Assembly: GCF_964204865.1 (NCBI RefSeq)
Contig: NC_135263.1
Coordinates: 14,384,001 to 14,448,000, forward strand
Source: Styela clava
Taxonomy: Eukaryota
Direction of reading: 5' to 3'
Length of the DNA stretch: 64,000 nt
The position numbers and the translations under genes are program-made. Positions 53,775-64,000 of the stretch are shown here, one piece after another (the first letter of the stretch is position 1; every line of letters begins with the position of its first letter). The notes beneath the pieces were generated by a model, which worked only from the letters and a program-made list of their open reading frames with translations, searched no databases and was not told where the DNA came from.

Positions 53775-54600
53775 GATCAATTACATTAATTCAGTCCAAT
53801 TACAAATACAATTACTTCGTGCAGAAAATTTCAAATTACAATTACATTTAGAATTATAACATTTTGGTTCGTATTTACATTTTCCCTTGCTCAAAAACTG
53901 TTGGATTGCACTTGATGAAGATTAGGCTGTGAAAAGTTTCTGAACCCAATAAATTTCTTCTTGCCGTATAAAAGTTACCCGCAATTGAAAAAACTCATTT
54001 TGACGGGGCTGATGTTGCTGTTAGTCTCAAATAATCCTTGGCTGAAGAAGCAAGCGTGGGAAGTTCTTCTGATTTCCTCTTCCAATACATTCATGGGTCT
54101 CCATCAAATTGCAAAATTTCTTCCTCCAAATAGCTATCTACTTCACTGTCTGATTTTCTTGGTCTTTTCTTTTTCAAATCTTCTGCCACCGCTGGGAAGA
54201 TGAAGTTTGAAAAAATGACTTGATAGGTGGTTGGCTATGATCAACCTTAGCCTTCATCGTGTTTTCCTGATGTTTTCTTTTGAAGTTTATGTATTTAGGA
54301 TATAGATGGGAAGAACATCTCTTCAAGTGCGTGATCAAGTTTGACAAAGCCTTGGTTGAGAACTTAAGTTTCTTTTTGCAGTTGTTACAGCATGCCTCAG
54401 TGCTGCTCAAAGATTTGAAAAATTCTAACAATGGTGCAGGAAGTGGTTAAACATCAGATCATTCCCAAGTATGAAATGCTGCGTTCAAAACAATATCATA
54501 TACTACTTCTAATTGTACTTCAGATTGAATTGAATAAGTTTTTTTAAAACGTTGTTTTGATCCACTGCTTATCTGTTAGCTTATTCAAGCAGCCCTGTTG
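53775..54600 (-). mobile_element. Decayed hAT transposon with BED zinc-finger remnant
   Basis: ORF 54431-54174 ACCNNCKKKLKFSTKALSNLITHLKRCSSH fits a BED finger; repeated aattac subterminal motifs at 53778-53860; boundaries approximate. Confidence 0.6.
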
Positions 54601-54971
54601 CATACTATAGCTTGCCAAAGTACAACACCGCCCGAAAAGAGAGTTGTAGTGGACCATGGTATACTATAGGCGATGAATGAGGAATACTGTAGGTGAAACT
54701 AAATTTATTTGAAAAAAATCTCTGCAGACACGGATCTCATTATACACGGAGTCCTAATTAGAATTCAAGTTTAGCACACTATTGAATGCTCCAGATATCA
54801 TGCTAAAACCAAACAAACAATGCTCAAATATAGGGATAATAATGTCAAGTGCCTGCTTTAAGAAACCAACTTGAATTGTTTTTTGCTGCTGCATGCTGAA
54901 CTGCAGTGAGATGCGACGTCAAATTTACTCAGTATAATCAGGGTTTTATTGGACACGGAGTCGACCTCCAC

Positions 54972-55935
54972 GCAGGCGTAGCCAGAATATTTTGCGCCCG
55001 GGGCAAACTATAAAATTGGCGCCCCAACCTCCACGTTTATTCATATTTTCTATTACATTTAATTGTATATGTAAAAACAATTCAAATTTTAGTGGAACAT
55101 TTTATTTAAAGAAGAAACAAAGCTATAGCATATGTCCATAATGTCCCACTCAGTTACTGTCAAAGATGATTTATATAGTCTACAATAAGTTTGGTTTTCT
55201 TGATTTCACTGTCGCAAACTGGTTTATCACCAATGTTTTTCTTTCAACACCTAAAACAGGGGTCGGCAAACTACGGCCCGTGGGCCAGATCCAGCCCGTG
55301 GAACAATATAATCCGGCCCGCGACGCTTCACTGAATTATATTAAAAAAACAACTGTATTGACGATTATATTCTTTACGTAACAGAATTTGTTTTGAGACA
55401 CTGAATTATATTATAATCTAACAAGTATATAATTCACAATCACTCGTTTAAATTGATTATAGAAGGACAAATCGCAACAAAACGTAAAAAAGTTGATGCT
55501 GAGTGCAAATGCTTTTATGGCGCAGAAAATGATCAGTCTTCGCGCGCTGCTTGTATCAACTTACATCGGAGTGCGCAGGCAAGAACTTATCGATACAGAA
55601 CTACGTAATTAACCCCGTGCATTTTGTTACCTAACGTTACCAAATCAACTTTTGCTTTGTTTTCCGGTCAGTTTTTTTGATCATGTAATTACCATGTAAA
55701 TCTGACCGTGCGCAAGCTATGTGCCTGATGACGTCGGCGGTCGACGTAAGTGGTCTGACCAAGTGTGCAATTGGCCATGTACTAAGACTAGATGTCTGCC
55801 GCCGGTGCAATCTTGCTTGTGACCGTTTTTTTAATCTTGTTGTGAAATTTCTGCAAGCCCCATTTTGGCGCCCTTGTACCTTGGCGCCCGGGGGCATATG
55901 TAGCATATGTACCCCATTGCCCCCCCCTAACCCCT
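54972..55935. mobile_element. Degenerate DNA-transposon MITE(s), with a nested Charlie-like end at ~55257
   Basis: gcgcccggggca motifs near both ends; caggggtcggcaaactacggcccg at 55257 is a typical hAT terminus; no TSD resolved. Confidence 0.45.
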
Positions 55936-56854
55936 CCCCCCCCCCAAAAAAAAAAAAGCCAAAAAGACATCTAAGCCAAAAAGACATCTAAGGCTACTTA
56001 TATTTTTCAAGCTCAAGGTTATGATCAAATACCGTATCCACCTGACTGTCGAAATTTAATTCTCCTGTGCATATCTCTTTCGTCATATCCGTTTTCCTAA
56101 ACTTTTAGAGGGAAATATTGGTAATTTGGACAAATATTTTTAAATACATAGAAAAAGGCTAATTATTAGTATTGACGAAATTCTCCGAATTCGTAAATTA
56201 GATCGATAAAAAAACCATTTTGAATTAGGCAACATGTGGCAACGAAAAATAACTGGATGTTGCAGCACGGTTTGTCAAACCGACCGCGCCGTGAGGCGCG
56301 AATAGGTAATAGTTTTCGGTGCACGTATAACGTGCGAAGTGTGGTTGGGTTGTGAAGTGCAAAAGTCGGGGTCAACAAGCCTAATAGAGAAAACCGCAAG
56401 TCCTACAGGGTCGCCCGAGGTGTCTAAAGAGAGCTGATGGTCCCCCCATTACTGAGAAAATTTTTCAGAACGATCCCGCCACGGGAAGGGCCCGAAAAAC
56501 GGCCCGAAAGCCAAAAAGTGCCTTTCTCCTTCAATGCGTTGGTCACATGACGTTCCATATAAGGTAATCCTTTGATTTCTTGCAGTTTCCCGGGGTTTCC
56601 GGGCCGCGCGAGGCGAGAGGGACTTCGCTAAAATTATTTTGAATTTTTTCAAGGCGGGGGGGTTTCCCCTCCCCGCCCCAGATAACGAGAAAGGGATTTC
56701 TTAGTTTTTTAAAACCTGGCAACACCATTTCGGCAGTCTGGTCTGTGTCGTTATCGGAAATAGGGGTTCCCGTGTAGGCAGAGGGCTCATACTTGGAAAA
56801 CGTGTATAACTAAACTAATTAACCCCTCAAAAAAAATTTGGGACGGATCCGGCC

Positions 56855-57250
56855 ACCTTGTGGTCAAATATTGAAATCGCTAAATTACGGCTTCTGCGAT
56901 AGATAGAGGCTTCAAAGTCAGTCATTGAGAAGCTCTAGTGTTACTCTTTCTTAGTTTGGGGACCCAACCGCACCCGAGCTCCCACTAGTGGTCAAATCGC
57001 GAAAATCTATATCTCGAGTTCTGCGATAGATAGAGTGTTCAAACTCGGTCAGTGGAAAGCTTAGGTGGTACTCTTTCTTAGTTTGAAGTCTCTACCGCAC
57101 ACGTGCTCCCACTAGTGGTCAAATCGCAAAAATCTTTATCTCGAGTTCTGTAGTTAGTAGATCCTGTAAACCTGGCCGACACGTTGTACTAACGACCCTA
57201 ATTCTTTATTTCATGAATTAGAGTCCTCCACACGCCCCCTAGTGGTGAAA
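56855..57250. repeat. ~127-bp tandem repeat, about 3 units
   Basis: gtggt(c/g)aaa recurs at 56860, 56988, 57115 and 57242; shared ttctgcgatagatagag and tactctttcttagtttg. Confidence 0.85.
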
Positions 57251-57454
57251 CGCCTACAGATCGATTAAACTTGGTAAACAATTCAAATTTGGGGGGCGTG
57301 CGCCGATCGAATTTCCGCTATTCGATTGGCGCGACTTACGGCGGTAATAGACACGCGAGTGCTACGTTTTTAAAAAAGCGTCGAGCGTTACAAATGTGCG
57401 CTTTAGCGCTTTTCCCCCTCGTTGGGAGGCCGAAGGCCGCACCTTTGACCACCA

Positions 57455-60400
57455 CTGGATGGGATCCGCCGTCTTTTTAAACGCAGCGATAGCTGCAACA
57501 GAAGCCAGCTACCAGCGGCCAGTGTAATTGGGTTGTCTAGTTACAGACGAGGGTCAACGCCTATGTTACGGAGAACCGCAAGTCCTAGAGACAAGCGGGA
57601 GGTGTCAAAAGATGGGGAACGGGGGCAAACTGACAAAGAAAATTTTTCAGAACGATCGGGCCAGAGGAAGTGGGCCAAAACTGGCTTTTAGTGGCCCTGG
57701 CGTGGCTACCTGTCAATCAAGCTGTCAGTCAAGTCACGCAAGAGTGATTTTGGGGTTTAGGAGCCGTTTAGCTGCGTTTCCGGGACGGGAAACGGTTTGC
57801 CAGGGCATAGGGAATTTTTCCAAACATGTTTGGGGGTGGGGGAAGTGCCCCCACCCCCCCAGTGGCGAAAAACGTTTAGAAAGCCACGCCCACTTAGGTA
57901 ATATGGTTTTTGGGCGATTAGGAGCACTTGGAATCGGTTTTCGGGCAAAGTGATGCATAAATATCGAAGGGACTAATTAATAGAATATATTACCACCCCA
58001 ACTTTGGGGATTCCCCTACACCGTAACGGTCCAGTGACTTCGGAACTTTGCGCTTAAGAATTGAGATATTGAGAAAAAAAAATACATAGGTAGGTTGGGA
58101 AAAATTGGTTTAATACTTTTTTCAAGGAATTTTTTGGCTCCCGTGCCTCCGTCACGGTCTAGTGATTTTGGCCTTTTGCCGGCTTCAGAGAGGTCATATC
58201 GAGAATCTAAAGGCATGGGCATGATCAGAAAATTTATTTCAATCACGTATCAGCGAAATTTTTTTTCTAGTAGCCTTCAGTTACGGTCCAGTGATTTTAG
58301 GCCATATCTCGAGAACGGTAATAGATAGGGGTCTAGTATTCGGGTTATAGAAGGCAGTTGGAGTCTAGTTTATGCCTATAAAATTTCGTCACGGTCGAGT
58401 GATCACAGACCTCAAAATTGATAAAAACAGACTAAAATTCAAAAACTAAAAATCGACATTGCGACAAACTATCTAATTAGCATAACAACCCTAATACTTT
58501 TTTGTCGCACTGTCGAAAATCCAACAACTAAAAATCGACATTGCGACAAACTATATAATTTGCATAACAACCCTAATCTGGTATGAAAAATTGACATTGT
58601 GACATTCTTGGACGGAAATTTCGACATTGCTACAAAATTGTCGCAATGTCGATATTTCAATCAGGAAAGTTAGAATTTTCGACAATGCGACCTATTTTGG
58701 TATTAACCGTCTATACGGAGAAAACTGTATATGTCAGGGGGGGCCGATGGCGTCGGTCGGATCACGCCGCGATCCGTCCGACGCAACGGATGGCGGCCAG
58801 AGCGTCACAGACACACCCGGCCTGGTCCAAACCAACCATTTGTGCGCCCGCGGCCCCCCTCGTCGTGTGCCGCAGGCAGACGTCTATTCTGGATGTTCTC
58901 CCGCCCACGTCCCGTGATATGGTGGCGATAGCCACAACAAAAAACAAAAGCCAGCGGCCAGAGATATTAATGGAAGGTCTATTACAGGGAGCGTTTCATC
59001 GGGGTATGTTACGGAGAACCGCAAGTCCTAGAGACAAGCGGGTGGTGTCAAAAGATAGCTGAGGGTCCCAATATACCAAAGAAAATTTTTCAGAAAAATC
59101 GGGCCAGAGGAAGTGGGCCAAATCGAGATTTTAGTGGCCCAAAAGTAAGGATGTGCGACATTGCCATTTCTAGGCTGTCAATCAGGTCACGCAACAGTGA
59201 TTTTGGGGTTTAGAAGCCGTTTAGCTGCGTTTCCGGGCCGGGAAACGGTTTGCCCGGGTATTGGGAATTTTTCCAAACGTGTTTGGGGGTGGGGGAAGTG
59301 CCCCCACCCCCCCAGTGACGAGAAAACGTGTAGAAAGCCACGCCCACTTAGGTAATATGGTTTTGTGGCGATTAGGAGCACTTGGAATCGGTTTTTTGGC
59401 AAAGTGATGCATATTTATCGAAGGGACTAATTAATAGAATATATTACCACCCCAACTTTGGGGATTCCCCTACCCCGTAACGGTCCAGTGACTTCGGAAC
59501 GTTGCGCTTGAGAATTGAGATATTGAGAAAAAAAAATACATAGGTAGGTTGAGAAAGTTTAGTTTAATACTTTTTTCAAGGAATTTTTTTGCTCCCGTGC
59601 CTCCGTCACGGTCTAGTGATTTTGGCCTTTTGCCGGCTTCAGAGAGGTCTTATCGAGAATCTAAAGGCATGGGCATGATCAAAAAACTTATTCCAATCAC
59701 GTATCAACGGAATTTTTTTTCCCGTAGGCTTCAGTTACGGTCCAGTGATTTTAGGCCATATCTCGAGAACGGTAATAGATAGGGGTCTCGTATTTGGGTT
59801 ATAGAAGGTAGTTGGAGTGTAGTTTATGCCTATGAAATTTCGTCACGGTCGAGTGATCACAGACCCTAAAATTGATAAAAACAGACTAAAATTAAGAAAC
59901 TAAAAATCGACATTGCGACGGATAAAACTGTCTATGTCAGGGGGCGCAAATGGCGTCGGTCGGATCACGCCGCGATCCGTCCGACGCAACGGATGGCGGC
60001 CCGAGCGTCGTAGACAAAACCGGCTAGGTCCAAACCAACTATTTGTGCGCCCGCGGCCCCCCTCGTCGTGTGCCGCAGGCAGACGTTTATTCTGGATGCT
60101 ACCCCGCCACGTCTCGTGATGGGTGGCGATAGCCACAACAAAAATCAAAAGCCAGCGGCCAGAGATATTAATGGAAGGTCAATCACAGACTCCGATCCAA
60201 CAGGGTATGTTACGGAGAACCGCAAGTCCTAGAGACAAGCGGGCGGTGTCAAAAGATAGCTGAGGGTCCCGATATTCCAAAGAAAATTTTTCAGAAAAAT
60301 CGGGCCAGAGGAAGTGGGCCAAATCGAGATTTTAGTGGCCCAAATGTAAGGATGTGCGACATTGACATTTCTAGGCTGTCAATCAGGTCACGCAATAGTG

Positions 60401-63400
60401 ATTTTGGGGTTTAGGAGCCGTTTAGCTGCGTTTCCGGGCCGGGAAACGGTTTGCCCGGGTATTGGGAATTTTTCCAAACATGTTTGGGGGTGGGGGAAGT
60501 GCCCCCACCCCCCCAGTGACGAAAAAACGTGTAGAAAGCCACGCCCACTTAGGTAATATGGTTTTTGGGCGATTAGGAGCACTTGGAATCGGTTTTTAGG
60601 CAAAGTGATGTATAAATATGGAAGGGACTAATTAATAGAATATATTACCACCCGAACTTTGGGGATTCCCCTTCCCCGTAACGGTCCAGTGAGCTCGGAA
60701 TGTTGCGCTTGAGATTTGAGTTATTGGGAAAAAAAAATACATAGGTAGGTTGAGAAAGTTTAGTTTAATACTTTTTTCAAGAAATTTTTTTGCTCCCGTG
60801 CCTCCGTCACGGTCTAGTGATTTTGGTCTTTTGCCGGCTAATGAAGGGTTTTATCGAGAATCTAAAGGCATAGGCATGATCAGAAAAATTATTCCAATCA
60901 CGTATCAGCGGAATTTTTTTTCCCGTAGGCTTCAGTTACGGTCCAGTGATTTTAGGCCATATCTCGAGAACGGTAATAGATAGGGGTCTCGTATTTGGGT
61001 TATAGAAGGTAGTTGGAGTGTAGTTCATGCCTATGAAATTTCGTCACGGTCGAGTGATCACAGACCCTAAAATTGGTAAAAACAGACTAAAATTCAGAAA
61101 CTAAAAATCGACATTGCGACAAACTATCTAATAAGCATAACAACCCTAATACTTTTTTGTCGCACTGTCGAAAATTCAACAACTAAAAATCGACATTGCG
61201 ACAAACTATATAATTTGCATAACAACCCTAATCTGGTATGAAAAATTGACAATGTGACATTCTTAGACGGAAAATTCGACATTGCTACAAAATTGTCGCA
61301 ATGTCGAAATTTCAATCAGGAAAGATAGAATTTTGGACAATGCGACCTATTTTGGTATGAACCGTCCATACGGATAAAACTGTTTATGTCAGGGGGAGCC
61401 GATGGCGTCGGTCGGATCTTGCCGCGATCCGTCCGACGCAACAGATGGCGGCCCGAGCGTCGTAGACAAAACCGTCATGGTCCCAACCCACCGTTTGTGC
61501 GCCCGCGGCCCCCCTCGTCGTGTGCCGCAGGCAGACGTTTTCTCCTGGATGGGATCCGCCGTCTTTTTAATCGCAGCGATAGCTGCAACAGAAACCAGGC
61601 ACCAGCGGCCTGAAGTTATATTGGGTAGTAAAAGACTCGGGCCTCCAACGGCTATGTTACGGAGAACCGCAAGTCCGAGAGACAAGCGGGTGGTGTCAAA
61701 AGATGGGGAACGGGGGCAAACTAACAAAGAAAATTTTTCAGAACGATCGGGCCAGAGGAAGTGGGCCAAAATTGGCTTTTAGTGGCCCTGGCGTGGCTAC
61801 CTGTCAATCAAGCTGTCAGTCAAGTCACGCAAGAGTGATTTTGGGGTTTAGAAGCCGTTTGGCTGCGTTTCCGGGCCGGGAAATGGTTTGCCAGGGCGTA
61901 GGGAATTTTTCCAAACATGTTTGGGGTGGGGGAAGTGCCCCCACCCCCCCAGTGGCGAAAAAACGTTTAGAAAGCCACGCCCACTTAGGTAATATGGTTT
62001 TTGGGCGATTAGGAGCACTTGGAATCGGTTTTCGGGCAAAGTGATGCATAAATATCGAAGGGACTAATTAATAGAATATATTACCACCCCAACTTTGGGG
62101 ATTCCCCTACCCCGTAACGGTCCAGTGACTTCGGAACGTTGCGCTTAAGAATTGAGATATTCGGAAAAAAAAATACGTAGGTAGGTTGGGAAAAATTGGT
62201 TTAATACTTTTTTCAAGGAATTTTTTGGCTCATGTGCCTCCGTCACGGTCTAGTGATTTTGGCCTTTTGCCGGCTTCAGAGAGGTCATATCGAGAATCTA
62301 AAGGCATGGGCATGATCAAAAAAATTATTTCAATCACGTATCAGCGAAAATTTTTTTCTAGTAGCCTTCAGTTACGGTCCAGTGATTTTAGGCCATATCT
62401 CGAGAACGGTAATAGATAGGGGTCTCGTATTTGGGTTATAGAAGGCAGTTAGAGTCTAGTTTATGCCTATGAAATTTCGTCACGATCGAGTGATCACAGA
62501 CCTCAAAATTGATAAAAACAGACTAAAACTCAACAACTAAAAATCGACATTGCGACAAACTATATAATTTGCACAACAACCCTAATCTGGTATGAAAAAT
62601 TGACATTGTGACATTCTTGGACGGAAATTTCGACATTGCTACAAAATTGTCGCACTGTCGATATTCCAATCAGGAAAGTTAGAATTTTCGACAATGCAAC
62701 CTATTTTGGTATTAACCGTCTATACGGAGAAAACTGTGTATGTCAGGGGGGGCCGATGGCGTCGGTCGGATCACGCCGCGATCCGTCCGACGCAACGGAT
62801 GGCGGCCAGAGCGTCACGGGCATACCCGGCCTGGTCCGAACCAACCGTTTGAGCGCCCGCGGCCCCCCTCGTCGTGTGCCGCAGGCAGACGTCTACCCTG
62901 GATGGGATCCCGCCGTCTTTTTAATCGTGGCGATAGCCACAACAGAAACCAGGCACCACGGGCCAGGACATTGATATGAAGTATAGTGATAATTGGGGTG
63001 CAAAAGGTATGTTACGGAGAACGGGAAGTGGCAGAGACAAGCGGGAGGTGTCAAAAGACAGCTGAAGGTACCCCGATCAGCAGAGAAATTTTTCAGAAAA
63101 ATCGGGCCAGAGGAAAGGGGCCAAAACTGGATTTTAGTGGCCCAAATTTGAGGATGTGCGACATTGCCATTTTCAGGCTGTCAATCAAGACACGCAAGAG
63201 TGATTTTGGGGTTTAGAAGCCCTTTGGCTGCGTATCCGGGCCGGGAAAGGGTTTGCCCGGGCATTGGGAATTTTTCCAAACATGTTTGGGGGTGGGGGAT
63301 GTGCCCCCGCCCCCCCAGTGGTGAGAAAACGTGTGGAAAGCCACGCCCACTTAGGTAATTTGGTTTTGGGCTATTAGGAGCACTTGGAATCGGTTTTTGG

Positions 63401-64000
63401 GCAAAGTGATGCTTAAATATGGAAGGGACTAATTAATAGAAAATATTACCACCTCAACTTTGGGGATTCCCCTTCTCCGTAACGGTTCAGTGAGTTCGGA
63501 ATGTTGCGCTTAAGATTTGAGATATTGAGAAAAAAAAAGACATAGGCAGGTTGAGAAAATTTAGTTTATCACTTTTTTCAAGAAATTTTTTATCTCCGGT
63601 GCCTCCGTCACGGTCTAGTGATTTTGGCCTTTTGCCGGCTTCTGAGTGGTCCTATCAAGAATCTAAAGGTATGGGCATGATCAGAAAACTTATTCCAATC
63701 ACGTATCAGCAAAAAAATTTTTCTAGTAGCCTTCAGTAACGGTCCAGTGATTTTCTGCCATATCTCGAGAACGGTAATAGATAGGGGTCTCGTATTTGGG
63801 TTATACAAGGTAGTTAGAGTGTAGTTTATGCCTATAAAATTTCGTCACGGTCGAGTGATCACGGACCTTAAAATCGATAGAAATGGACTCCAGTCCGTAC
63901 CGTTGAAACTGTTTATGTTAGGGGGGGTCGATGGCGTCGGTCGGATCATGCCGCAATCCGTCCGACGCAACAGATGGCGGCCCGAGCGTCGTAGACACAA
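57455..64000. repeat. Tandem macro-repeat of 1.2-1.45 kb GC-richer units, continuing past the window end
   Basis: gttacggagaac recurs at 57565, 59008, 60209, 61656 and 63011 (periods 1443, 1201, 1447, 1355); a strongly diverged partial unit lies at ~56385-56830. Confidence 0.95.

What the first reader, a model, noticed from the sequence alone, without database searches (positions are those of the whole stretch)
57455..64000. Tandem units with a conserved structured scaffold followed by a 41-45 bp hypervariable segment
Seen: the units are highly similar, but between the conserved ccagcggcc and tatgttacggaga every unit has a different, nearly constant-length segment: 57521-57561 agtgtaattgggttgtctagttacagacgagggtcaacgcc; 58960-59004 agagatattaatggaaggtctattacagggagcgtttcatcgggg; 60161-60205 agagatattaatggaaggtcaatcacagactccgatccaacaggg; 61611-61652 tgaagttatattgggtagtaaaagactcgggcctccaacggc; 62965-63007 aggacattgatatgaagtatagtgataattggggtgcaaaagg. 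Each follows a ~220-nt GC-rich, base-pairable block that starts after tatgtc-AGGGGG. Inference: a constant scaffold plus variable cassette, arrayed in tandem, is the layout of a guide-like small-RNA array or of a rolling-circle element carrying variable flanks. Caveat: some segments share short words (attgggt, agactc, tccaac) and two share their first 20 nt, so they may be fast-diverging homologues. An rDNA intergenic-spacer/spacer-promoter array is an alternative.
Basis: partly seen in the sequence, partly recalled or inferred. Interest (0 to 1): 0.75.

Follow-up and report, generated by a model that had tools for sequence, protein, structure and literature searches.

The report
Helitron-linked concatemers of modular DNA units
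The repeats are non-coding 1.2-1.45 kb DNA modules joined head to tail at one invariant 7-base site, found beside a giant rolling-circle (Helitron-like) transposon gene; the "hypervariable" stretch is a fast-diverging linker that marks subfamilies and is not a guide.

Summary
They fall in the most variable part of the unit. Genome-wide, however, they are not unique per unit: 44 units of this family carry 12 discrete types. Each of the five window types matches only other array units, at full length, on several chromosomes.

The GC-rich "scaffold" and the variable segment belong to different modules. Units are bounded by an invariant heptamer, CTGG^ATG (93 of 93 internal junctions). The scaffold is the tail of unit n; the variable segment lies 66-110 nt into unit n+1. 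Twenty of 58 neighbouring pairs switch unit family exactly at the heptamer. Four array ends fall on the heptamer, and their deviant bases lie on the flank side.

Two hairpins show compensatory changes: a 13-bp one in the tail and a 5-bp one in the head.

All 6 full-length copies of a giant OTU / Helitron-like Rep / PIF1 / GIY-YIG gene have such units 1-3.5 kb downstream.

No Rfam family, tRNA or Pfam-recognisable ORF was found. The rDNA spacer is unrelated.

Best reading: non-autonomous Helitron-like modules concatenated at a Rep-type site. A guide-RNA array is not supported. First-reader notes of this scan on other pieces of the genome describe possibly the same repeat.

The parts
56253..56259 (+). 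Left end of the array: first CTGGATG heptamer. Unique AT-rich DNA lies upstream.
   Evidence: Coverage by array loci of other chromosomes starts here.
56257..57458 (+). X-family unit (1202 nt). It has two head hairpins (56268-56282, 56286-56299), the core motif at 56456, an internal 127-bp duplication at 56892-57150, a tail hairpin at 57300-57332 and the CCCCTCG box at 57415.
57459..58892 (+). Y-family unit (1434 nt). Its head follows an X-family tail. Variable segment at 57521-57561.
58893..60095 (+). Y-family unit (1203 nt; it lacks the optional ~250-nt CGACATTGCGAC module). Variable segment at 58960-59004.
60096..61548 (+). Y-family unit (1453 nt). Variable segment at 60161-60205.
61549..62901 (+). 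Y-family unit (1353 nt). Variable segment at 61611-61652.
62902..64000 (+). Y-family unit, cut by the window end. Variable segment at 62965-63007. The array runs on to about C18:14464180.
57455..57461 (+). Junction heptamer CTGG^ATG. Further copies start at 58889, 60092, 61545 and 62898.
   Evidence: The motif is exact in 93 of 93 internal junctions across all loci read.
57483..57496 (+). Head mini-hairpin GCAGC-GATA-GCTGC. Other copies: 58922-58935 (GTGGC/GCCAC), 60123-60136, 61573-61586, 62927-62940.
   Evidence: 5 pairs, 90 of 90 cells paired, 3 pairs with changes on both sides, 0 of 500 shuffles reach the observed score.
58749..58784 (+). Tail main hairpin (14-bp stem with one T-T mismatch, 7-nt loop). 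Other copies: 59952-59987, 61404-61439, 62758-62793, 63933-63968. The X-family version is at 57300-57332.
   Evidence: 13 consensus pairs in 18 sequences of 4 unit families; 5 pairs keep pairing through changes on both sides.
59081..59094 (+). Core motif GAAAATTTTTCAGA, inside the ~100-nt block that is the only part shared by all unit families. Other copies start at 56456, 57638, 60282 and 61729; the sixth copy (AAATTTTTCAGAA, starting at 63086) has a changed first base and is listed only.
   Evidence: The extended pattern has 488 genome matches against 1 for the reversed control.

Best explanation
The array is a concatemer of self-contained, non-coding DNA modules of 1.2-1.45 kb. At least three families occur (X, Y, Z), plus relatives that carry internal 240-bp sub-repeats.

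ANATOMY (shown). Each module starts right after CTGG^ATG with a family-specific head. Next comes a core and body partly shared between families. The module ends with a GC-rich tail: a G-run, a 13-14-bp hairpin, a CCCCTCG box and CTGG.

LIKELY MECHANISM (inferred). The modules are most likely non-autonomous relatives, or terminal modules, of a giant Helitron-like rolling-circle element. That element's gene encodes OTU, an HUH-type Rep, a PIF1 helicase and a GIY-YIG nuclease. I infer that the Rep cuts and joins single-stranded DNA at the heptamer. The hairpins on either side would serve as its recognition structures. New modules, or multimers made by rolling-circle read-through, would be joined at the heptamer of a resident module or at heptamer-like sites in the genome. 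That would build mixed head-to-tail arrays.

THE VARIABLE SEGMENT (inferred). It is a length-constrained, sequence-free linker between two constrained elements. Its types are old subfamily markers, reshuffled by short conversion patches. It is neither a guide nor a currently mutating site.

SHOWN VERSUS INFERRED. Shown: module boundaries, re-assortment, the form of the array ends, hairpin covariation, the link to the gene, and conservation within each type. Inferred: Rep-mediated joining, a single-stranded DNA role for the hairpins, and neutrality of the linker.
For: 1. Boundary. CTGGATG is exact in 93 of 93 internal junctions, although the sequence on both sides differs between families.
2. 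Modularity. Each of 8 head clusters goes with one tail family in 73 of 73 units. Yet 20 of 58 neighbouring pairs switch family exactly at the heptamer. Further mixed junctions appear.
3. Array ends. Three left ends read ataaCTGGATG, ataaCTTGATG and actaCTAGATG; one right end reads CTGGGTG. The deviant base is always on the flank side of CTGG^ATG. This is as expected if half-sites come from a motif-like target.
4. Helitron-like 3' end. Read in the gene's orientation these ends are CATC(C/A/T)AG followed by T in 3 of 3. A small hairpin lies 20-45 nt upstream of the end in the X and Y heads. The copy at C18:17.13 Mb has about one unit, ending GCAC-TTTCA-GTGC...CATCTAG|T.
5. Link to the gene. ORF domains: PIF1 E 3.4e-12 and GIY-YIG E 5.4e-5, above cut-off; OTU E 1.4e-5, above cut-off; Helitron_like_N E 4.9e-5, below cut-off. 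In the protein atlas, 26 of 30 hits are PF14214 clusters. Six full-length copies exist, and 6 of 6 have units 1-3.5 kb downstream.
6. Hairpins. Compensatory changes in both.
7. Recent spread. Units 96-99% identical lie on different chromosomes. The 60-nt windows around a variable type are 100% identical in 10 of 10 listed places (one type) and in 25 of the 40 listed places (another type).
8. Literature. Helitron-group elements carry or form tandem arrays (passages read in PMC10048060 and PMC7492417).
Against: 1. Canonical termini are not met. There is no 12-16-nt terminal inverted repeat between head and tail (0 of 8 head/tail combinations beat the 95th percentile of shuffles). No 5' TC can be assigned unambiguously. 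Internal junctions read CCAG, not CTRR, in the gene's orientation.
2. The last 50 nt before CTGG fold no better than shuffles in 5 of 5 tails, and the Z-family head also does not.
3. Orientation relative to the gene is antisense in 5 copies but co-oriented in the C17 copy.
4. Many arrays have no full-length gene nearby.
5. Rep identification rests on a below-threshold Pfam hit plus an atlas lead. No solved structure matched by sequence.
6. Only four informative array ends were read; a fifth is truncated inside a unit.
7. Neutral drift alone does not explain two types that differ at 13 of 25 core positions while about 59 flanking nt are identical. Conversion patches are assumed to account for this.
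8. No excision product, circle or empty site was seen.
Confidence: 0.55

Rival explanations
1. An ordinary complex satellite. The units multiply and homogenise only by unequal crossing-over and gene conversion. The link to the Helitron-like gene reflects origin (a repeat once carried by the element) or co-location in repeat-rich DNA, not ongoing mobilisation. The variable segment is simply the least homogenised patch.
For: Long same-orientation arrays occur on many chromosomes. There is higher-order order of unit types and near-identical neighbours. Sub-repeats of 127-240 bp lie inside units. Conserved and variable boxes are usual in satellite monomers (passages read in PMC7492417). Short patch differences look like gene conversion.
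Against: Homologous exchange does not explain joins between families that are unalignable on both sides of a 7-nt motif (20 of 58 pairs). Nor does it explain array ends on the motif with flank-side deviations, nor units downstream of 6 of 6 gene copies that are only 70-72% identical to the copy beside this array.
Confidence: 0.28
2. A tandem array of small-RNA genes. A structured scaffold RNA is read through into a variable guide-like stretch that targets other sequences.
For: Two hairpins are kept by compensatory change. The variable stretch has nearly constant length and 12 types. Short contigs of three runs that are guessed to be RNA cover 20-29 of 30 bins of the unit, and one contig of a true RNA library covers 59650-59887.
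Against: Scaffold and variable stretch re-assort across the unit boundary. There is no match to any variable type outside array units (5 of 5 window types). There is no Rfam family at E<=1 apart from one chance-level miRNA hit. The variable stretch has no cognate pairing partner in its own unit (diagonal -20.4 against -20.2 kcal/mol). Contig coverage is spread over the whole unit and not over a small RNA, and DNA carry-over cannot be excluded. The true-RNA contig lies in the body, not at the scaffold or the variable segment.
Confidence: 0.07
3. An rDNA intergenic-spacer or spacer-promoter array, or a satellite derived from one.
For: Nested sub-repeats and GC-rich hairpins resemble spacer architecture.
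Against: The 13 matches to eukaryotic 18S rRNA lie on C2, C3, C5, C6, C17 and two small contigs, none near an array. The rDNA spacer fetched from C17 is 38 copies of a 192-bp repeat and has no BLAST hit to any array locus at E<=1e-3. No rRNA family is found in the window.
Confidence: 0.01

Closest known systems
Tandem arrays formed by or carried in Helitron/Helentron rolling-circle transposons (oyster Cg_HINE satellite-like repeats, Drosophila DINE-TR1, centromeric Helitron arrays of maize)
   Same: A Rep-helicase element is linked to head-to-tail arrays that also stand alone as satellite-like DNA on many chromosomes. There are hairpins near the unit ends, and sequence boxes alternate between conserved and variable. 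Passages read in PMC7492417 and PMC10048060. The maize work (Xiong et al. 2016) I saw only in a reference list.
   Different: Units here are 1.2-1.45 kb, against mostly 140-180 bp in oyster. Arrays mix unalignable unit families joined at one invariant heptamer. No subterminal inverted repeats or microsatellite flanks were found. The linked gene also carries GIY-YIG.
Helitron-like element groups HLE1 and HLE2, and 'proto-Helentron' / 'HLE2-reverse' (HELIANO paper, PMC11417382, passages read)
   Same: The gene has an OTU domain, which the paper lists for HLE2. The array ends look more like HLE1: a hairpin, then C(N)AG followed by T. This mix is what the paper describes for proto-Helentron. A GIY-YIG domain in an HLE2 family is reported there for a moss; the supplementary figure could not be seen.
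   Different: A 5' TC/TT and terminal inverted repeats are not shown here. Neither DUF6570 nor an AP-endonuclease domain was detected at E<=0.01 in the three pieces covering Rep, helicase and GIY-YIG, or at E<=0.1 in the N-terminal piece. The element's own 5' end was not found.
Bacterial rolling-circle insertion sequences IS91/ISCR and IS200/IS605 (recalled, no call)
   Same: HUH enzymes there insert next to a short specific target (for IS91, CTTG or GTTC) that resembles the sequence at the element's own end. One-ended events give multimers.
   Different: Those are prokaryotic, much smaller and not known as mixed-family arrays. The resemblance is one of logic only.
Integron cassette arrays (recalled, no call)
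   Same: Independent modules, each ending in a hairpin-forming site, are joined at a short conserved core, giving arrays in which neighbours are unrelated.
   Different: Integrons use a tyrosine recombinase, their cassettes encode proteins, and they are bacterial. Here the modules are non-coding and the candidate enzyme is an HUH Rep.

Membership tests
Helitron-like element, canonical group (HLE1) | Rep (HUH) plus PIF1-type helicase gene in the autonomous copy | tested here: met
   PIF1 E 3.4e-12. Helitron_like_N E 4.9e-5 at 24 bits, below the 28.9 cut-off. Atlas: 26 of 30 hits are PF14214 clusters. The sequence also shows an H-V-H and a Y-L-I-K-Y stretch; reading these as Rep motifs is from recall. 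The gene adjoins the array but is not inside a unit.
Helitron-like element, canonical group (HLE1) | 3' end: short hairpin followed by CTRR; insertion between A and T without duplication | tested here: inconclusive
   In the gene's orientation the three array 3' ends read CATCCAG|T, CATCAAG|T and CATCTAG|T. Only one of these is CTRR. Internal junctions read CCAG in 93 of 93. Head hairpins lie 20-45 nt from the end in X and Y, but the Z head folds no better than shuffles. The one 5' flank read ends ...GCAC before CCAG; it ends in A only if the cut is placed two bases earlier.
Helitron-like element, canonical group (HLE1) | 5' end begins with TC | tested here: inconclusive
   The junction CA|TCCAG contains TC if the cut is placed two bases earlier. 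The single array 5' end reads CCCAGG.
Helitron-like element, group 2 (Helentron/Helitron2, HLE2) | Short terminal inverted repeats of 12-16 nt at both ends, with a stem-loop after the right repeat | tested here: not met
   Best inverted match between the first 40 nt and the last 260 nt scored below the 95th percentile of 200 shuffles in 0 of 8 head/tail combinations.
Helitron-like element, group 2 (Helentron/Helitron2, HLE2) | Accessory domains typical of the group (OTU, AP endonuclease, DUF6570) | tested here: inconclusive
   OTU E 1.4e-5 at 26 bits, above the cut-off. No AP endonuclease or DUF6570 was found. GIY-YIG is present instead.
Satellite DNA | Non-coding units repeated head to tail in long arrays at several loci | tested here: met
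   An array of about 24 kb here, and arrays on at least 12 contigs. The longest ORF in the units is 141 aa. None of the 8 ORFs tested has a Pfam match with E below 0.09.
Guide-RNA array (CRISPR-like, omega-RNA/Fanzor-like, snoRNA-like) | A constant scaffold and its variable guide form one unit, and guides match targets elsewhere | tested here: not met
   Scaffold and variable stretch are separated by the unit boundary and re-assort. No matches outside arrays for 5 of 5 types. No Rfam family. A TnpB/Fanzor gene was not searched for.
rDNA intergenic spacer repeats | Lies between rRNA genes or shares sequence with the spacer | tested here: not met

The most novel reading that the evidence does not exclude
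This is a eukaryotic, integron-like way of building DNA arrays. The HUH Rep of a giant Helitron-like element, perhaps helped by its GIY-YIG nuclease, integrates circular 1.2-kb modules site-specifically at CTGG^ATG. Unrelated modules therefore stack into cassette-like arrays. The 20-25-nt saturated stretch next to the cut-site hairpin acts as a specificity or identity tag for each module lineage, for example in Rep recognition or as a source of small RNA, and is not neutral DNA.
Probability: 0.12. Interest if true: 0.75.

Novelty: new variant of a known kind. Interest (0 to 1): 0.45.

Why it matters
Rolling-circle transposons are known to seed satellite DNA, but the joining step is rarely visible. 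Three features here point to site-specific joining at a Rep-type site and not to simple unequal exchange: an invariant heptamer, family switching exactly at it, and array ends carrying flank-derived half-sites. If that holds, this genome offers a tractable case of how Helitron-like elements build and spread long arrays. It would also offer an unusual OTU-Rep-PIF1-GIY-YIG gene whose cutting site can be guessed and tested on oligonucleotides. For annotation, it warns that a 'scaffold plus variable cassette' pattern in tandem repeats can be an artefact of reading across a module boundary.

Tried and rejected
REJECTED READINGS.
- Known RNA families. Rfam at E<=1 on 54000-64000 gave one chance-level hit (mir-2012, 24.4 bits against a threshold of 90). 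Rfam at gathering scores on the whole window gave nothing. There are no tRNA genes.
- Coding. 49 ORFs of at least 50 aa overlap the region, the longest 141 aa. Eight of them were scanned in Pfam; the best E-values were 0.091 and 0.18. Reading frames are not kept between families, as seen in the sequence.
- rDNA spacer: rejected.
- The variable stretch pairing with another part of its own unit: rejected. The own-unit rank among 12 was 1, 6, 12, 6, 9, 5, 8, 3, 7, 9, 1, 12. Only the part of the unit downstream of the segment was tested.
- Terminal inverted repeats: none.
- A hairpin just upstream of CTGG on the + strand: not better than shuffles.

LED NOWHERE.
- Tandem Repeats Finder missed the units because its longest period is 500.
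- 'Solo' units were sought on C3 and C8; all proved to lie in further mixed arrays, so no new ends were gained.
- The gene's own 5' end was not found. Its upstream 4.7 kb matches regions 8-46 kb upstream of other copies. More arrays lie 19-60 kb beyond the gene on C18.
- The PDB sequence search with the Rep region gave nothing.
- My first regex found only 33 segments of 7 types because its anchors were too strict. One search supersedes it.
- Alignment A3 used wrong ends for minus-strand references and was redone as A4.
- RNA evidence is inconclusive. All four runs are contigs, and three are only guessed to be RNA.

NOT DONE.
- Variable segments were not compared with a transposon library or with viral collections.
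- No search for TnpB/Fanzor genes.
- No phylogeny of the Rep-helicase.
- The supplementary figures of PMC11417382 on the GIY-YIG family could not be seen.

LITERATURE. Three searches found no paper describing these arrays. The species name used comes from earlier notes of this scan and was not tested by me.
Full report
WHAT IS THERE.
From window position 56253 to the window end, the AT-rich sequence (33% GC) gives way to a 46% GC array. The array continues for about 24 kb in all, to C18:14464180. Direct-repeat analysis gives spacings of 1454, 1201, 1436 and 1365 nt. Tandem Repeats Finder missed the units because its longest period is 500.

Four of them follow a 220-224-nt block of 63-68% GC. 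The first follows the tail of a different unit family.

WHAT IT IS NOT.
No Rfam family reaches its threshold in the window. At E<=1 there is only a chance-level miRNA hit. There is no tRNA. ORFs are short, and the eight tested match no Pfam family.

The 13 matches to 18S rRNA in the assembly lie far from any array. The one rDNA spacer I fetched is 38 copies of a 192-bp repeat with no similarity to the arrays. The rDNA-spacer alternative is out.

WHERE THE UNITS REALLY BEGIN AND END.
Related arrays lie on many contigs. The core pattern alone occurs 488 times, against 1 for the reversed control. I read about 170 kb of these arrays.

They are not made of one unit type. At least three families (here X, Y, Z), plus relatives with internal 240-bp sub-repeats, are strung together. 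All families share the heptamer CTGGATG. Of 94 tails recognised by their CCCCTCG box, 93 are followed by the exact heptamer. The one exception is an array end.

I cut at CTGG^ATG and got 79 intervals, of which 73 are 1100-1500 nt long. I clustered their first 120 nt (head), an inner 500 nt (body) and their last 200 nt (tail).
- Each of 8 head clusters goes with a single tail family in 73 of 73 units.
- 20 of 58 neighbouring pairs change family exactly at the heptamer.

So the GC-rich 'scaffold' is the tail of unit n. The variable segment lies 66-110 nt into the head of unit n+1. Y heads follow X tails 7 times, Y tails 27 times and Z tails 4 times.

ARRAY ENDS.
Three left ends read ataaCTGGATG (window 56253), ataaCTTGATG (L037) and actaCTAGATG (L046). 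One right end reads CTGGGTG (L038). A fifth end, next to the gene, is truncated inside a unit.

The deviant base is at position 3 in left ends and position 5 in the right end. In both cases it lies on the flank side of CTGG^ATG, while all 93 internal junctions are exact. This is what site-specific joining into motif-like targets would leave. With only four ends, the pattern is suggestive and not proven.

THE VARIABLE SEGMENT.
In 44 Y-family units the highest diversity is at unit positions 80-109 (pi 0.49-0.51; mean 0.19; the next 50 nt 0.07-0.12). Other patches reach 0.31-0.43.

The 44 segments fall into 12 types at >=85% identity, 39-45 nt long. Between types the first 20 nt keep 0.68 identity. 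The rest has 0.52, the same as shuffled sequence. The 40-nt flanks have 0.77 and 0.85.

Within a type the segment is conserved. Sixty-nucleotide windows around each of the five window types match 2, 3, 10, at least 33 and at least 33 places. All hits are full length, all lie in arrays and many are 100% identical. There is no partial match elsewhere at E<=1.

The segment is therefore a set of conserved subfamily alleles and is not mutating now. Two types differ at 13 of 25 core positions while about 59 flanking nt are identical, which looks like a short conversion patch. The stretch has no preferred pairing partner in its own unit.

STRUCTURE.
The 223-nt block as a whole folds little better than shuffles (z -1.97 and -1.68). 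Two hairpins, however, are kept by compensatory change.
- The tail hairpin has 13 pairs in 18 sequences of four families; 5 pairs change on both sides.
- The head mini-hairpin has 5 pairs. All 90 cells pair, 3 pairs change on both sides, and 0 of 500 shuffles reach the observed score. This agrees with another first-reader note on this stretch.

The last 50 nt before CTGG show no better-than-random fold in 5 of 5 tails. The Z head does not either. No terminal inverted repeat links head and tail.

THE NEIGHBOUR.
An open frame starts 1.4 kb beyond the array's far end and runs on the opposite strand. It comprises 1773 aa, a further piece of 694 aa and 432 aa more upstream. Its domains are:
- OTU, E 1.4e-5;
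- a weak Helitron_like_N match, E 4.9e-5, below the Pfam cut-off;
- PIF1 helicase, E 3.4e-12;
- GIY-YIG, E 5.4e-5.

A protein-atlas look-up of the Rep region gave PF14214 clusters in 26 of 30 hits. No solved structure matched by sequence.

The assembly holds six full-length copies. The other five are 70-72% identical to this one, and three copies have unbroken frames of 2839-2871 aa. All six have array units 1-3.5 kb downstream. In five the units are antisense to the gene. In the C17 copy they are co-oriented.

The copy at C18:17.13 Mb has only about one unit. Read in the gene's orientation it ends with a GCAC-TTTCA-GTGC hairpin, 23 nt, then CATCTAG followed by T, which is a Helitron-like 3' end. 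In two copies the unit nearest the gene is a Z-type unit that stops just before its tail. More arrays in the same orientation lie 19-60 kb beyond the gene on C18. The element's own 5' end was not found.

READING.
The best-supported explanation has three parts.
- The units are non-autonomous modules of, or mobilised by, this Helitron-like element.
- They are joined at a Rep-type site, with hairpins on either side as single-strand recognition structures.
- The variable segment is a length-constrained linker that records old lineages.

The literature read in passages shows that Helitron-group elements carry tandem repeats, can be repeated as whole elements, and seed satellites (PMC10048060, PMC7492417). 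It also gives the terminal rules for the two groups and reports a GIY-YIG capture in one family (PMC11417382). Against those rules the present units fail the inverted-repeat test and are ambiguous for TC/CTRR. I therefore file this as a variant, not a member. A plain satellite evolving by unequal exchange remains a serious rival. A guide-RNA array is unlikely.

TRANSCRIPTION AND SPREAD.
Contigs of three small runs that are only guessed to be RNA cover 27, 29 and 20 of 30 bins of one unit. One contig of a true RNA library (238 nt, 5 differences) lies on 59650-59887, in the body. One contig skips 60089-60277, which fits a different unit type and not splicing. This neither shows nor excludes transcription.

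Runs filed under five coded organism labels, from nine studies, hold 9-63% of the unit's sampled words. The family is thus not confined to the assembled individual.

Earlier notes of this scan call the genome a sea squirt; I did not test that.

Noticed in passing
L041:7578-9899 (-), L045 and L049:1-1296 (-), i.e. C18:14465581-14474296: Giant gene with OTU, Helitron-like Rep, PIF1 helicase and a C-terminal GIY-YIG domain. This copy has one frame break near C18:14470900-14470919. Five other full-length copies exist, three of them with unbroken frames of 2839-2871 aa. GIY-YIG fused to a Rep-helicase appears rare in print; one moss family is mentioned in PMC11417382.
   Followed up: partly
L041:7353-7487 and L049:3094-3228: A 135-bp repeat (82% identical between the two copies, same orientation) lies just after the gene's stop codon and again about 2 kb upstream of its start. 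It also lies after the stop codon of two other gene copies and at unrelated sites on C1, C13 and C17. It may be a small dispersed element.
   Followed up: partly
L037:4640-5880 (C6:2808640-2809880): A ~1.2-kb AT-rich insertion interrupts an array unit. It has ~14-bp inverted ends (AGAGATGTACCGAT...) rich in GTATCGG repeats and is flanked by a duplicated TTTTTAGT. It looks like a small cut-and-paste transposon with an 8-bp target duplication.
   Followed up: no
L031:5560-10000 and L033, L035: Inside some units the ~240-bp stretch that holds the shared core motif is itself tandemly repeated (spacings 239-241 nt), so the arrays are nested repeats.
   Followed up: partly
window 56892-57150: A tandem duplication of a 127-bp sub-repeat (85% identical) lies inside the X-family unit. 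The Y/Z body holds four diverged ~130-bp sub-repeats with the word ACGGTCCAGTGA.
   Followed up: no
L044 (C17:16640846-16648845): The rDNA intergenic spacer of this genome is almost wholly 38 copies of a 192-bp repeat (98% matches, 56% GC). The rDNA unit spacing on C17 is about 14.5 kb.
   Followed up: no
window 60350-60520 and equivalents: The conserved body holds several perfect or near-perfect palindromes (CCAAACATGTTTGG, GTTTCCGGGCCGGGAAAC, GGGGGTGGGGG-AAGT-GCCCCCACCCCC) and a GCCACGCCCAC box. Their role is unknown.
   Followed up: no
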